Source: Eutreptiella sp. 'Long Island Sound 2002'
Lineage: Eukaryota > Protista > Euglenida
Assembly (NCBI GenBank): GCA_964036045.1
Contig: OZ038378.1
Span: forward strand, 158,224,001-158,288,000
DNA: 64,000 nucleotides
Direction of reading: 5' to 3'
Position numbers and translations under genes: made by a program. Under the pieces are notes generated by a model, which was not told the origin of the DNA, searched no databases, and was given only the letters and a program-made list of their open reading frames with translations. How positions within the stretch are numbered: position 1 is the first letter of the stretch; each line of letters begins with the position of its first letter. This document shows positions 13,111-30,350 of the stretch, piece after piece.

Positions 13111-13924
13111 AGGTCAGGTCAGGTCAGGTAATGCCAGCAACCACTGTCCGCAAGCCCGCCGAAGCGTCAAGCGGCAAGACGTCTGGCCGTACACACTCTA
13201 CCCACTCCGAAGAGAGCCGGCAGGATCGCCGCTCGTTGATCTGGCAGGACGGCCAGGATGTGAGAGTTTCTCTTGCTCTGAGCAGGACGGCTCAGCAACG
13301 ATGGGCAGGCATCTTCTACGAGGCTTGCCCTGTGAGGCCTCCACCCTCTCCTAGGGGCTGACGGGACATCTCGATGTCTGGCACGGGAGAACGAAGCACG
13401 AGAACGCGGCAAGAGGGTGGATCATTAACTCCTTGATAGCTGGTCCATCAGTTCCTGGTGACGATGTGAAGCTGGGGGATCTGTCCACTGGATAACCCAC
13501 AGACCGGGCAGTACCACCACTGTGTCCATGCACCTCGGCTTATCATGCATGGACACCACCACATTTATGTCATCATCCCCTGATGGTCCTTGCGGGCTCC
13601 ACAGGACGCGGCGAGGGATGTACCTGAGCTGGACCAGGGCGGGGGCAGGATGCACATCTCTGCACATGGGGCACGCAGGTGGGTGGAGAGGTAGGTTAGG
13701 AAAACTTGATGCCCCCAAGAGAGGTCCTCACGATGACCAAGGCCTGGGGCCGTGCTCTGCTGGATTTGGGCTACGATGTCGCCTTGGCGCAGCGACGAGG
13801 ACAGGGAGCACACATATATAGTGGAAAGCTTCGTCAGGTCCACTGGGGCTGGGTCGTCACTGTGGCGGGGATAATAGGATACAATACCAGACAGGGTGAT
13901 CCAGATCACACCCAGGTCAAGTCT

Positions 13925-16900
13925 CTAGCACCCTTCCTGCGACACACGGACGGGGACAGCAACCCCACGCCTAGAAATGGTTGCCGAGTGCACGGAGTGA
14001 ACCTCTACACGCCAATCATCTGTGAGGACATGACACAGTACACTCCGAAATGCGGTGGTGACCGCCACCCAGAGCGGCAGGCACGTAGATTCAAAATGGT
14101 CCGCCCAGGCAGAGACTGGGAGCTCACAGAACGGGCAGTAGGACCCAGGGGGTGAGCTGATGTATGGCGCTGATCGGATCCACATGCACGCCCGAATCTC
14201 ATTGGTGTCCAGCGCCAGGTCAGCCACCTGCTGAGACCAGTCACTGACCTGCTGGTCTCTGGGACGCCGAAGAGGGGGGGGTACCACCTCTGTCTCATAG
14301 ATGGCAGACAAAGAGTCCACTGGAGAGACACACAACCGTCCATGCCGAAACAGCAGCGCACTTGGAGAGAGGAGGGAGAGGAGAGGTATTGCGAGGGGAG
14401 GGGGCCGCGCTGCCTTAACAGAGGCCAGATCATGTGCCCGTTGCTGAGCGTCAGCCACAAAGTGGGCCCACCCTGTGGTGTGCTGCGAGGGGGTGTACCC
14501 TTCGTCAAAGGAGTGATGGGTGAACACTCGCAGGAGATAACGCATGATGCAGTTCACATAGTGAGAGCGGGTTTGCTTCCGCAAACCATCATTGATGGCT
14601 GCACTGAGGTTGTCACCCAGCAGCAGAGCTGACTGGTAGCCTGCATCCAGGACCTTGGACACTCCCAGGGCTTTTCCGAGCCACTCTGCCACCCATGATG
14701 ATGGGTCATCGACGGCCATGGCACCCCAAAAGGCACCTGCAACGCCAAGGTCATCTACGATAACGACCGCAAAGCCTACAGCCTGCCCTTTGGCTGCTCC
14801 ATCACTGACGACAGTGAGCGGGGGATGGAGGTCCTTTCGGTGCCATGCACCCTGGATCTCTGACTCTCTGAGATCTGCTGCAGGGCGCACACTGAAAAAC
14901 AGGCCGAAGCGCTCGCAATCACGCTGGAAGATCAGAGGGTCAGCATCCTGTAATTGGGACCAGACAGGATCATACAGCAGGCCCTGAACGAGAGCCCTTG
15001 TGTAAATACTGCGGCTCTGGGCCGCCAGCACTGTGTGATACACCCGCTGGAGTACGAGACGGAGATGCAAGGAGGGAAAGCCCATACCGAAGGACTCAAA
15101 GGGCATGGATATGAGTTTGGAGGGGAACCAACAGGGAAGCGACAAAGCAGAGCGCGCAGCCTGGTGTACCTGAATCTGAAGGGGAGAAAGCAGGCACTGG
15201 TCTACAGGGACCAGAGACAACCGGTAATCAACCCCCGAAACGGCATAAGCCATCACGACCCGCAGGGCCAGGATGCAGGAGGGCTTTTTCCACTTTATCT
15301 TGGCTATCACTCTGATCATTTGATCTTTGGCTGCAGCCAGAATAGTGTGCACAGGCTCATGCATGACACAGGGGATGCCGACTGTGTGCAGCCCCGAAAC
15401 GTCGTGCTCTATGGTGCCCAGAGTGCAGGAAAGGGAGCCCTTGGCATATTGCAGCCTGCCACTCTGCAAAACAACGTGATAGACTTTAAGCTTGCCTGAG
15501 TTCACCGACCCACCTGAAGAGTTCGCCAGGTCGGCTGACACATTCAGGTTGGTACACATGTCCTCGGCCGAGAGGGCAAGCTGCCGGCCATCGTCTGAAA
15601 AAGTCATCTCAGGCACAGTGACACCCGGCAAACACGGGTGTGGTGGGCCAGCCACTTCATCACGAAGAGCCCAGGACCGAAGCATGCGCGGTACCAGATA
15701 CCCACCCACACCCATGCTGTCCCCCTGCACCCCCCCTTGGAGCATGTAGTACGGGGGGGCTAGGCCAAAAGGGGTCTGCAAGTAGACCAGGAAACTTCCA
15801 AAATACCACGTCATCCAGGGGCCGACATGCTCCAAGGCAGGATCATCTAGGAGGTAGCCCCGGAGCATCTCACGGCAGATGTTGCAAAAAGCGTTGCTCT
15901 CGTCCCAGTCGGCGCACCAGATGCCGCTGGGGTTCACCAGGGCCCAATAGGCCAGGTAATAACGCAAAAAAAGGGCAAGGTGGTGCGGGGTGAGCTCCTT
16001 TCTATAGGCAAATGCCCAGGGTGGCATCAGTCCGGTAAGCTCTGCTCGCGACATGAACTTGGTAAAGAGGAGGGTGGACTCACGGCGGCGGACCACTGGA
16101 CCTATGACTATTGGGCGACTATTGCGCAGCAGCCAGTGAGGAAGCTTTTTCAGGAGGCAGACATGGATCGCTGACTGTAGATACCTGGAAAAGTGCCCAT
16201 CCCTGAGCAAGGACATCCAGCGCAGCAGCGTGGCATGACCACAGGGGGCAAGCAGCTGCAGCACACACTCAGGCAGCTCGTCGAGAGCGGTAGCCTCTGA
16301 GCCATGCTTGCTCAAGATCCACTGCCACTCCTGGGGGGATACCTCCGAAGCCACTGAGACTGCACCCACTATCTGGCGTGCGTACGGGACTGCTTTGGAG
16401 GCCAAGAATTGAAGCGTGAGGTCCTGCATGGAAGAGTCATCGCGAGGTTGGGGAGGGGCTCGGGCTCTTGAGGCCGCAGTTCTGATTCTATGTACATCGT
16501 GGACGAGCCATCTCAGCCCATACAATTCTTGAGCTTGTGATCGGGCCTCATCAATAAATTCGCGGGGGGACGTAGGGAAGTTGACCCCATCAGGACTGAC
16601 TGACGTTACTACCTTAAAGTTTTTTGTCTTGATCTTATACATTTTCGAGGTAACAGAATCTATGGACGTCCGGCGCATATCCCGGGCATCAAGGCCAAGG
16701 CCGGCCCGACATGCCTTGTCACGTAATGCCTGTTGCCATTTACGCACCTGCTCCGCTGCACACCTGTCACCAAGCATGGCTTTATATTCAAGGCCACGCA
16801 GGCGCTTGGACTCGTCCACCTGCACTCTACCGATGTACCTGGGCACAAACTGGACAGCCAGGCTGAAATATTCCTCCATGCACTGATCTATGGGTCGTGA

Positions 16901-29780: not shown

Positions 29781-30350
29781 GCAGAAGCGCAGTGCAAGAG
29801 CGCTGCAGTGCAGGGGAAGTTCACAGTACAGTTATCAGTCCCTGCAGCCCCCGTTCTCGGTGCTGGGATACGATTCACGACCCTGCAAGTGCAGCAACGA
29901 TGCAGCGGAGTGCGTGTGGGGGGGGGGGGGGGGTTTGGCTGTAGCTGTTGTTCTGTTGCGCTGGTGGCCCCTGTTCCACCCTTCCCGTTTTCTGTCGCGC
30001 TATGTGTAGTGCGAGAAAAAGAACTCAGGGAGCCTGTTGACGGCGGCCCAAAAACGGTCATGTGGTGCAGTGAGCCAGCTGGGGACAGGTGGCACTGCCA
30101 ACTGGGCCCTGGGACCGTGAGTAGATCCCCCGGATGGGCCATTGGCTGGACGGGGCAGTGCAGCCCAGCACCTCAGCCGTGGGCGGTCTGCCCTGTGGAA
30201 GGGGGGGGGGGTCGGGGTTGCATTTCACCCTGGACCGGCTCAGGGCTTATGCACGACACCGTTAGCACCCCCGCCGCAGGCGGGAGCCCAGGCCCTGTCG
30301 TTCGGGGCTCCGCACCTGGTCACCATCCCGTTGTGGGTGGCTAGCTCGGC

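What the first reader, a model, noticed from the sequence alone, without database searches (positions are those of the whole stretch)
13111..30350. Young, apparently intact non-LTR retrotransposon with highly divergent RT and unusual architecture
ORF2 combines a ~320-aa N-terminal extension (CxxC...CxxC ribbon plus a second CxxC), APE, RT, RNase H and a CCHC-like knuckle. The RT motifs depart strongly from typical LINE consensus: ATALDELP for KAPGPDG, WAFAYRKE for QxGFR, DWDESNAFCN for LDxxKAFD, GVQGDSMG, FSDD. It is clearly unlike LINE-B in the same window. Inference: it may represent a deep or unassigned clade.
Basis: partly seen in the sequence, partly recalled or inferred. Interest (0 to 1): 0.8.

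Follow-up and report, generated by a model that had tools for sequence, protein, structure and literature searches.

The report
Divergent LINE retrotransposon targeting TG microsatellites
The region holds two tandem, almost identical copies of a recently active jumping gene (a LINE) from a previously unnamed, very divergent family seen so far only in metagenomes; it inserts preferentially into TG-repeat DNA, but both copies here are slightly broken.

Summary
It covers two head-to-tail copies on the minus strand, not one element: copy A 30350..21780 and copy B 21680..13112, 99.7% identical, each embedded in (TG)n. ORF2 has conserved N-terminal zinc ribbons, an APE endonuclease, a reverse transcriptase that Pfam RVT_1 does not detect, RNase H and a CCHC knuckle.

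"Intact" is only partly right. The family's full ORF2 is about 1752 aa. Both window copies carry an in-frame TAG at codon 1586 that removes a conserved 167-aa C-terminal domain. Copy B also has frameshifts in ORF1 and in that tail.

Three more copies in the same assembly (98.8-99.6% identical) show:
- the true tail is (ACCTG)4-5;
- a 13-bp (11 bp plus a shared TG) target-site duplication at a unique site;
- 4 of 5 insertions in TG-rich microsatellites, always in one orientation.

The family is large and deep. Every member whose source was looked up comes from a metagenome collection; none has a named NCBI or UniRef relative. Its RT profile matches R2 (E 5e-15) far better than human L1 (2e-3). 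The domain order APE-RT-RNH-CCHC plus a weakly RLE-like C-terminal fold lacking a catalytic triad equals Dualen/RandI.

Best reading: a new, deep LINE lineage with Dualen-like architecture. No phylogeny against Repbase clades could be run.

The parts
21780..30350 (-). Copy A of the LINE (8571 nt), full length
   Evidence: Self-BLAST and MAFFT against copy B give 99.7% identity. The same 5' end, CCGAGCTAGCC, and the same 3' end occur in L004, L008 and L009.
13112..21680 (-). Copy B of the LINE (8569 nt), full length but with a 5-bp deletion in ORF1 (~19038) and a 1-bp deletion (~13618)
29601..30350 (-). 5' UTR of copy A (750 nt) with two poly-C tracts that vary in length between copies. It presumably holds an internal promoter, because every full-length copy starts at the same base.
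   Evidence: The promoter is inferred.
27411..29600 (-). ORF1 of copy A (729 aa): open, no Pfam domain, family-specific, with a Pro/Arg/Ser-rich basic tail
   Evidence: It is conserved at 18-31% identity in the ORF1s of L001, L005, L006 and L007.
22596..27353 (-). ORF2 of copy A as it stands (1585 aa), ending at an in-frame TAG (22598-22596)
26394..27266 (-). N-terminal zinc-ribbon domain of ORF2 (aa 30-320): CxxC-x10-CxxC, an SPP motif, then CxxC...C
   Evidence: Invariant Cys columns in the family alignments. No Pfam or PDB match.
25674..26390 (-). APE-type endonuclease (aa ~322-560)
   Evidence: Pfam PF03372, E 9e-9. The family profile matches L1 EN at domain E 5e-10. Foldseek matches L1 EN and TDP2. 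Catalytic N328, E355, D467, D519 and H543 are conserved.
23574..24983 (-). Reverse transcriptase, fingers-palm-thumb (aa ~791-1260), with motifs DWDESNAF, QGDSMG, FSDD and GMGFP
   Evidence: In one search the profile matches R2Bm at E 5.4e-15 and L1 at 2e-3.
23064..23531 (-). RNase H domain (aa ~1275-1430)
   Evidence: Conserved D1294, E1333, D1357 and H1401. The AF2 model shows a beta-beta-beta-alpha-beta-alpha-beta-alpha topology. There are weak RNase H hits, and JGI names the relative P0096 'ribonuclease HI'.
22752..22808 (-). CCHC zinc knuckle (C1516, C1519, H1529, C1534)
   Evidence: Invariant in alignment A5.
22098..22595 (-). Reading frame of the conserved C-terminal domain, cut off from ORF2 by the TAG. 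It is open in copy A as far as the family's normal double stop.
   Evidence: In the AF2 model of the intact L004 version (pLDDT 79.9), the best Foldseek matches are R2 proteins and PD-(D/E)xK nucleases, none significant.
21780..21799 (-). 3' tail of copy A, (ACCTG)4
   Evidence: The same tail abuts the target-site duplication directly in L004. L009 has (ACCTG)5.
13925..18682 (-). ORF2 of copy B (1585 aa, same TAG; 2 amino-acid differences from copy A)
30352..30494 (-). (TG)n array upstream of copy A, read as target microsatellite
21681..21779 (-). (TG)n array between copies A and B
12105..13111 (-). (TG)n array of about 1 kb downstream of copy B
8486..12104 (-). Chain of three short units: X1 12104..11545, X2 10980..10079, X3 9049..8788. 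Each ends in a short motif ending in TG and is followed by 0.3-1 kb of (TG)n. They are candidate non-autonomous passengers of the same targeting system.
   Evidence: X2 is a 5'-truncated copy of a ~1.4-kb repeat that occurs twice next to the LINE copy in L009, each time followed by (TG)n.

Best explanation
This is a recently active autonomous non-LTR (LINE) retrotransposon of an unnamed, deeply diverged family, carried by an unidentified GC-rich microbial eukaryote.

Coding layout:
- The element is bicistronic.
- ORF1 is a family-specific protein, presumably an RNA-binding chaperone.
- ORF2 encodes, in order: an N-terminal zinc-ribbon domain, APE endonuclease, RT, RNase H, a CCHC knuckle, and a C-terminal domain. 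That last domain may retain a restriction-endonuclease-like fold without a catalytic triad.

Proposed mechanism (target-primed reverse transcription):
- The APE nicks the CA-rich strand just after a CA.
- The terminal UG of the RNA's (ACCUG)n tail pairs with that 3' end.
- The RT copies the RNA and RNase H removes the template.
- Second-strand cleavage 11-13 bp away gives the target-site duplication.
- Because of the nick and annealing preference, and possibly the zinc domain, the element lands mostly in TG-rich microsatellites, always with its sense strand on the TG strand. This is a safe-haven strategy.

The window holds two such copies in one (TG)n tract. They share a premature TAG, so they are probably no longer autonomous. 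The pair may have arisen by unequal exchange between the flanking (TG)n arrays rather than by two separate jumps.

Shown: the anatomy, the copies, the target-site duplication, the target bias and the homologies. Inferred: the promoter, the roles of ORF1, the zinc domain and the C-terminal domain, the nick site, and the origin of the tandem pair.
For: Anatomy and copies:
- Two copies are 99.7% identical. Three more in the same assembly are 99.0-99.6% identical at the nucleotide level.
- The L004 copy sits at a unique site. It has the duplication TGAACCGCACCAT (11 bp plus a TG shared with the tail), no (TG)n, and the tail (ACCTG)4 abuts the duplication.
- L008 sits in (TGGGTG)n and L009 in (GT)n, on both flanks and in the same orientation.
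- (TG)n tracts of 20 nt or more make up only 0.11% of 91 kb of other sequence from the same assembly.

Domains:
- Pfam detects the APE.
- The family profile matches L1 EN and R2/L1 RT.
- The AF2 model (pLDDT 89.3, pTM 0.86) matches human L1 ORF2p with E 1e-26 over about 1000 columns.
- Catalytic residues of APE, RT and RNase H, and the CCHC, are invariant or nearly so.

Family:
- 442 representatives have E <= 1e-3.
- There are at least 4 well-supported deep sublineages.
- Subfamilies have 10-50 members each in the host assembly, and full-length ORF2s are 1712-1765 aa.
- ORF1 is conserved across the family.

Premature stop.

Published Dualen domain order of APE, RT, RNase H, CCHC, RLE: PMC5029228, PMC4640811, PMC9977147.
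Against: - No RT phylogeny with reference clades could be run, so the depth and the Dualen affinity rest on E-values, architecture and a weak fold signal.
- The C-terminal fold matches are not significant (best E 0.09). Only one acidic column is conserved there, so calling it RLE-like is tentative.
- Target preference rests on five insertions, of which the two window copies may be one event.
- Target-site duplications cannot be read inside repeats.
- The host is unidentified.
- No transcription or transposition data exist.
Confidence: 0.72

Rival explanations
1. It is simply a member of an already described Repbase clade, either Dualen/RandI itself or Proto1. Both are reported to carry APE, RT and RNase H. 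It looks new only because those consensus sequences are absent from the protein databases searched here.
For: - The domain order equals the published Dualen order (PMC5029228).
- RNase H is reported for Proto1 and Dualen/RandI (PMC4640811).
- RandI elements also have short tandem-repeat tails and SINE partners (PMC3747384).
- The RT is closer to R2 than to L1, as expected for a group placed between RLE and APE elements (PMC4640811).
Against: - The defining Dualen feature, a second endonuclease of the RLE type, is not supported. No conserved PD-(D/E)xK triad exists in 21 aligned relatives.
- The published Dualen descriptions that I could read mention no separate ORF1 and no N-terminal zinc ribbons.
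- No named NCBI or UniRef relative was found.
Confidence: 0.3
2. It is a fast-evolving offshoot of the L1 superfamily that, like plant and algal L1s, acquired RNase H. The R2-like RT score would then be a long-branch or profile artefact.
For: - The best structural matches over EN through RT are human L1 ORF2p (E 1e-26).
- The APE is closest to L1 EN by profile.
- The layout is bicistronic, with an 11-13-bp target-site duplication.
- A CCHC lies near the C-terminus, as in L1.
Against: - The RT profile scores 12 orders of magnitude better on R2 than on L1.
- Full-length L1 is the only APE-bearing LINE protein among the PDB matches, so the long structural alignment is expected for any APE LINE.
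- Pfam RVT_1, which readily detects the other LINE fragment in this window (E 2e-19), fails here.
- The tail is not poly(A).
Confidence: 0.12
3. The (TG)n flanks are not targets. They are tails made by the element (RT stuttering on the terminal UG) or ordinary microsatellite expansion, and the tandem pair plus the short units are a local duplication artefact.
For: - The (TG)n tracts after each unit range from 100 nt to 1 kb.
- The tail ends in TG.
- Copies A and B share the TAG and have nearly the same 5' junction.
Against: - L008 lies inside a different, pre-existing repeat, (TGGGTG)n, present on both sides.
- L009 has about 300 nt of (GT)n upstream of its 5' end.
- L004 has no (TG)n at all after its tail.
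- An unrelated non-autonomous repeat (X2) shows the same association at two loci.
Confidence: 0.1

Closest known systems
Dualen / RandI non-LTR retrotransposons (Kojima & Fujiwara 2005; green algae, cryptophytes)
   Same: - The order of domains is the same: APE, RT, RNase H, CCHC knuckle, then a C-terminal domain where Dualen has its RLE (PMC5029228).
- The RT has affinities to RLE-type elements.
- Tails are short tandem repeats, and there are candidate non-autonomous partners (PMC3747384).
- Hosts are GC-rich protist-type genomes.
   Different: - No conserved PD-(D/E)xK catalytic residues.
- A separate conserved ORF1.
- A 300-aa zinc-ribbon domain in front of the APE.
- A short 11-13-bp target-site duplication, whereas an active Chlamydomonas Dualen often gives very long duplications (median 900 bp for the >50-bp class, PMC9977147).
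- A TG-microsatellite preference.
- Relationship by RT phylogeny was not tested.
Human LINE-1 ORF2p (PDB 8uw3, 9k6i, 9hdr)
   Same: - The overall EN-linker-RT-thumb-C-terminal architecture superposes over about 1000 columns.
- The nuclease is APE-type.
- Integration leaves a target-site duplication, and the RNA is bicistronic.
   Different: - Sequence identity is 13-14%.
- The RT profile match is only 2e-3.
- L1 has no RNase H, no N-terminal zinc domain and no RLE-like tail.
- L1 has a poly(A) tail and nicks at TTTT/A.
R2 elements (PDB 8gh6, 8ibw, 9nl2, 9dou)
   Same: - They are the best sequence match for the RT palm and thumb (E 5e-15).
- They have N-terminal zinc-binding DNA-recognition domains.
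- A CCHC knuckle is followed by a C-terminal domain (weak).
- They insert into repeated DNA.
   Different: - R2 has no APE and no RNase H.
- R2 has a single ORF.
- R2 uses an active RLE and is specific for 28S rDNA.
Microsatellite-specific LINEs: Mino (AC)n, Kibi, Koshi, Dong and Togen (TG)n (Kojima & Fujiwara 2004; PMC4640811)
   Same: - They insert in a fixed orientation into simple repeats as a safe haven.
- Togen targets (TG)n.
   Different: - Those belong to the R1, Tx1, R4 and NeSL lineages with ordinary RTs, and Togen is RLE-type.
- This family is not strictly specific: the L004 copy lies in unique DNA.

Membership tests
Non-LTR (LINE) retrotransposon, APE type | N-terminal-side APE/Exo_endo_phos nuclease with catalytic residues | tested here: met
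   - Pfam PF03372, E 9e-9.
- Profile match to L1 EN.
- Fold match.
- N328, E355, D467, D519 and H543 are conserved.
Non-LTR (LINE) retrotransposon, APE type | RT with LINE-type palm and thumb and the catalytic xxDD motif | tested here: met
   - FSDD and D927 are invariant.
- Profile matches to R2 and L1 RT.
- AF2 model with Foldseek matches.
Non-LTR (LINE) retrotransposon, APE type | No LTRs, a defined 3' tail, variable target-site duplication, 5' truncation or internal deletions in copies | tested here: met
   - The tail is (ACCTG)4-5.
- L004 has a 13-bp duplication, 11 bp plus a TG shared with the tail.
- L009 is an internally deleted copy.
- The 100-nt repeat between copies A and B is (TG)n, not an LTR.
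Dualen / RandI | Domain order APE - RT - RNase H - CCHC | tested here: met
   The published order is in PMC5029228.
Dualen / RandI | A second, restriction-like endonuclease (PD-(D/E)xK) at the C-terminus | tested here: not met
   - A conserved C-terminal domain follows the CCHC.
- Its model's best fold matches are R2 proteins and PD-(D/E)xK nucleases, but all are non-significant (E >= 0.09).
- Only one acidic column is conserved (D/E in 17 of 21). There is no second conserved acid or Lys.
- The fold question is inconclusive; the catalytic motif is absent.
Dualen / RandI | RT groups with RandI/Dualen references in a phylogeny | not testable with these tools
   No Repbase or reference Dualen sequences are available. 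The original paper is not held.
L1 clade | RT groups with L1; poly(A) tail; ORF1 with coiled coil, RRM and CTD | tested here: inconclusive
   - The RT profile matches L1 only at 2e-3, against 5e-15 for R2.
- The tail is (ACCTG)n in this element, although one distant relative (L006) ends in poly(A).
- ORF1 has no Pfam match.
- No tree was possible.
I group (I, Ingi, Tad1, Loa, R1, Nimb, Outcast) and Proto1 | APE + RT + RNase H, with the RT nesting in those clades | not testable with these tools
   - The architecture is compatible; RNase H is listed for these clades in PMC4640811.
- No references were available.
- The failure of Pfam RVT_1 argues against a typical I-group RT. That expectation comes from my own knowledge, not from a test.
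Microsatellite-targeting LINEs (functional class) | Insertions concentrated in one simple repeat, in one orientation | tested here: met
   - 4 of 5 copies lie in TG-rich arrays with the sense strand on the TG strand.
- The background of (TG)n in the same assembly is 0.11%.
- The sample is small.

The most novel reading that the evidence does not exclude
The family is a clade-level lineage branching near the transition from RLE-type to APE-type LINEs. It would be a descendant of a dual-endonuclease (Dualen-like) ancestor that keeps the CCHC and an RLE-shaped but catalytically dead C-terminal domain. It has added a zinc-ribbon DNA-reading head in front of the APE that steers it into TG microsatellites. 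That would make it a living intermediate for the proposed replacement of RLE by APE in LINE evolution.
Probability: 0.25. Interest if true: 0.75.

Novelty: new variant of a known kind. Interest (0 to 1): 0.55.

Why it matters
If the placement holds, this family adds a deep branch to the LINE tree. It would come from a eukaryote that is essentially unsampled: even its 4-domain ion channel has no relative above 25% identity.

It would also give a concrete test case for how APE-type LINEs arose from elements with restriction-like endonucleases.

In practice it is a compact natural example of orientation-specific insertion into TG repeats, with a recognisable tail, target-site duplication, near-intact copies and passenger elements. 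Such systems interest those studying target-primed reverse transcription and safe-harbour insertion.

It is also a warning for annotation. Pfam RVT_1 misses this RT, so the family would be invisible to routine domain-based TE screens.

Tried and rejected
- phmmer of ORF2 against PDB found nothing. Only family profiles worked.
- Rfam on the whole window found no family.
- A search for the dinoflagellate spliced leader gave no match.
- Host identification through the neighbouring 1586-aa four-domain ion-channel ORF failed. The best hits were 23-25% identical animal Cav channels.
- Pfam on ten other window ORFs gave nothing useful.
- The three homologous-protein searches (single sequence, host gene, RT-RNH profile) returned only unnamed metagenomic proteins. 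The one addition was a marginal RVT_1 protein from NCBI metagenome assemblies.
- A scan of JGI metagenome contigs with the RT-RNH segment found no relative.
- Accession look-up in papers showed only that SRR8925817, the source of relative P0015, is an anaerobic-digester metagenome (PMC7842101).
- The idea that (TG)n is the element's own tail was rejected because of L004 and L008.
- The idea that the C-terminal domain is an active RLE was rejected on conservation.
- The Dualen paper (PMC1182223) and the RTclass1 paper (PMC2829327) are not held.
- The RT tree against reference clades was not run. No reference sequence has a reference id here, and typing sequences is excluded.
- The stop-interrupted ORF2 was not searched as a read-through. 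The naturally open L004 copy was used instead.
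Full report
**What is in the interval**

ORF listing, self-BLAST and a pairwise alignment show that 13112-30350 holds two head-to-tail copies of one element on the minus strand.
- Copy A is 30350..21780 (8571 nt) and copy B is 21680..13112 (8569 nt).
- They differ at 25 alignment positions, which is 99.7% identity.
- Read on the minus strand, the layout is (TG)71, copy A, (TG)50, copy B, then about 1 kb of (TG)n.
- Each copy has a 750-nt 5' UTR and an ORF1 of 729 aa.
- A 57-nt spacer separates ORF1 from ORF2. ORF2 is 1585 aa as it stands, and about 800 nt follow it.
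- Each copy ends in TACCTGACCTGACCTGACCTG.

- Pfam detects only the APE domain, at aa 325-523 with E 9e-9. It finds no RVT_1.
- phmmer against all PDB sequences finds nothing.
- An exhaustive phmmer search of 1.84 billion representatives with aa 320-1500 found 442 proteins at E <= 1e-3. Among them are full-length relatives at 42%, 38%, 28%, 26% and 25% identity.
- In an alignment of ten of these, the quoted motifs are invariant or nearly so:
  - APE: N328, E355, D467, D519, H543.
  - RT: S795..P804, F891/Y893/R894, D927-E928-S929, Q986-G987, F1028-S-D-D1031, K1064, G1102.
  - RNase H: D1294, E1333, D1357, H1401.
  - CCHC: C1516, C1519, H1529, C1534.
- The N-terminal extension is also conserved across the family: CxxC-x10-CxxC, an SPP motif, then CxxC and a further Cys.
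- An AlphaFold model of aa 320-1500 built on 59 relatives is confident (pLDDT 89.3, pTM 0.86).
  - Its best PDB matches are full-length human L1 ORF2p (E 1e-26, about 1000 aligned columns, 13-14% identity).
  - R2 proteins come next.
  - The segment aa 1275-1430 of the model has the strand and helix order of RNase H.

Other copies of the same element lie in the same ENA assembly, ERZ25074135. The window's contig is ctg8353_33x_l, 171,388 bp.
- Two of those copies encode longer ORF2 products.
- Translating all four full-length copies shows that the L004 copy is open for 1752 codons.
- Both window copies have TAG at codon 1586, where L004 and L008 have CAG.
- Copy A is otherwise open to the family's normal double stop. 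Copy B also carries a 1-bp deletion there (~13618) and a 5-bp deletion in ORF1 (~19038).
- The lost 167 residues are not junk. They align with the C-termini of 20 relatives, share an invariant S-G and a W..W(D) motif, and full-length relatives run 1712-1765 aa.
- So "apparently intact" holds for ORF1 of copy A only. The pair share the TAG and nearly the same 5' junction.
- They could be two insertions from one source, or one insertion duplicated by unequal exchange between the flanking (TG)n arrays. I cannot tell which.

**Ends, duplication and target**

- All full-length copies begin at the same CCGAGCTAGCC, preceded by 0-2 odd bases.
- L004 sits in unique DNA. TGAACCGCACCAT is present on both sides, and the (ACCTG)4 tail abuts it with no (TG)n.
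  - So the tail is (ACCTG)n and the duplication is 13 bp: 11 bp plus a TG that is shared with the tail.
- L008 lies inside a (TGGGTG)n array on both sides. Its 3' junction again shares TG in register with the array.
- L009 is an internally deleted copy. It has 298 nt of (GT)n upstream and 82 nt downstream.
- With the window, 4 of 5 copies lie in TG-rich microsatellites, always with the sense strand on the TG strand. If A and B count as one event, the tally is 3 of 4.
- (TG)n or (CA)n tracts of 20 nt or more make up only 0.11% of 91 kb of other sequence from this assembly.
- I read the TG arrays as the target, not the tail. I infer a nick after CA on the CA strand, with the terminal UG of the RNA pairing to it.

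**Passenger elements**

Downstream of copy B lie three short units. Each ends in a short motif ending in TG: (ACATG)n, (AAGCATG)3, and CATTG. Each is followed by 0.3-1 kb of (TG)n.
- One of them, X2 (10980..10079), is a 5'-truncated copy of a ~1.4-kb repeat with internal 46-nt repeats.
- That repeat occurs twice next to the L009 LINE copy, again followed each time by (TG)n.
- The first 101 nt of X1 are 79% identical to the 5' end of the related LINE in L001.
- These look like non-autonomous elements using the same target. This is inferred.

**The family**

- Every member whose source was looked up comes from ENA, JGI or Logan metagenome assemblies. None has an NCBI or UniRef name.
- The host assembly alone carries at least three lineages that differ by 58-80% in ORF2: the window family, P0002 in L001, and P0174 in L005. 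Their 90%-identity clusters hold 10-50 members each.
- An ML tree of the RT-RNH region gives at least four well-supported deep sublineages.
- ORF1 is conserved across them at 18-31% identity and has no known domain. In P0003 and P0019 ORF1-like sequence is fused to ORF2.
- Tails vary between lineages:
  - (ACCTG)n in this element.
  - Poly(A) in L006.
  - Possibly (CCTGAA)n in L005.
  - Possibly (AACC)n in L007.
- In L001 the 42% relative is also arrayed head to tail, separated by 1.7-2.6 kb of a G/T-rich 30/57-nt satellite.

**Comparison with known groups**

- A profile of the RT-RNH region matches Bombyx R2 at E 5.4e-15 and bird and turtle R2 at 2e-11 to 3e-8. It matches human L1 RT only at about 2e-3.
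- The APE is closest to L1 EN.
- Pfam RVT_1 hits only 9 of 23 relatives, best 1e-6. The other LINE fragment in this window scores 2e-19.
- The AlphaFold model of the intact C-terminus, L004 aa 1440-1752, is fair (pLDDT 79.9).
  - It has no significant PDB match (best E 0.09).
  - The top of the list is nevertheless filled with R2 proteins (195-260 aligned columns) and PD-(D/E)xK nucleases: CinB/CidB, MspJI, XisH, splicing endonuclease, BamHI, and Prp8.
- In RLE-type LINEs and in Dualen, a CCHC knuckle directly precedes the restriction-like endonuclease. The published Dualen order is APE, RT, RNase H, CCHC, RLE (PMC5029228; see also PMC4640811, PMC9977147).
- The family therefore has the Dualen layout. 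However, only one acidic column is conserved in the C-terminal domain (D/E in 17 of 21), with no second acid or lysine.
- So the defining second endonuclease is not supported. I do not file the family as Dualen. I call it Dualen-like in architecture.
- Proto1 and the I group also combine APE, RT and RNase H (PMC4640811). They could not be tested.

**Limits**

- The host is unknown.
  - The window is about 56% GC.
  - The neighbouring 1586-aa uninterrupted four-domain Ion_trans ORF has no relative above 25% identity.
  - There is no dinoflagellate spliced leader and no Rfam family.
  - One distant relative comes from an anaerobic-digester metagenome.
- Nothing here looked human. 

**Verdict**

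This is a real, young LINE family with a truly divergent RT and an unusual head and tail. It is present here as two slightly broken tandem copies inside a TG microsatellite, which is its preferred target. It is most likely a new deep lineage related in design to Dualen/RandI. Clade-level novelty is plausible but unproven.

Noticed in passing
window 33138-37898 (-): A single uninterrupted 1586-aa ORF encodes a four-domain voltage-gated cation channel (Pfam Ion_trans x4, E 2e-65). Its closest database relatives are only 23-25% identical animal Cav channels. The host lineage therefore seems essentially unsampled.
   Followed up: partly
window 8486-12104 (-); L009 8915-12022: A chain of short units (X1, X2, X3) each ends in a TG-terminated motif followed by long (TG)n. 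X2 belongs to a ~1.4-kb repeat with internal 46-nt repeats that is found twice beside another LINE copy. These are likely non-autonomous retroposons sharing the TG-repeat target.
   Followed up: partly
window 11545-12104 (-) vs L001 6470-6567: The first 101 nt of unit X1 are 79% identical to the 5' end of the 42%-related LINE in L001. X1 also contains a 167-nt duplication. It may be an internally deleted LINE derivative.
   Followed up: no
L001 4774-6468 and 15016-17578; 6765-7454: The 42% relative is also arranged head to tail, with 1.7-2.6 kb of a G/T-rich 30/57-nt satellite, (TGG)n TGCGCGGGTGGG, after each copy. Two 344-nt monomers lie in its 5' UTR, reminiscent of mouse L1 promoter monomers.
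   Followed up: no
A weak RNase H-like ORF lies nearby on the other strand. Both are fragmentary and unrelated to the element studied.
   Followed up: no
window 30212 / 21539-21541 and 29935 / 21259-21261: Two poly-C tracts in the 5' UTR differ by 3 nt each between copies A and B, and also differ in L004. They could be homopolymer slippage or long-read homopolymer error.
   Followed up: no
P0003 and P0019 (L002 and another contig): In two distant relatives the ORF1-like region is fused in frame to ORF2, giving products of 1945-2007 aa. The family therefore switches between one-ORF and two-ORF layouts.
   Followed up: no
window 53846-54736 (-): A 296-aa ORF has a rhomboid protease domain (Pfam E 1e-7), presumably a host gene.
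   Followed up: no
L006 1-48 and 392-450: (ACCCCT)n arrays lie at the start of the contig that carries the poly(A)-tailed relative P0041. This may be telomere-like repeat context.
   Followed up: no
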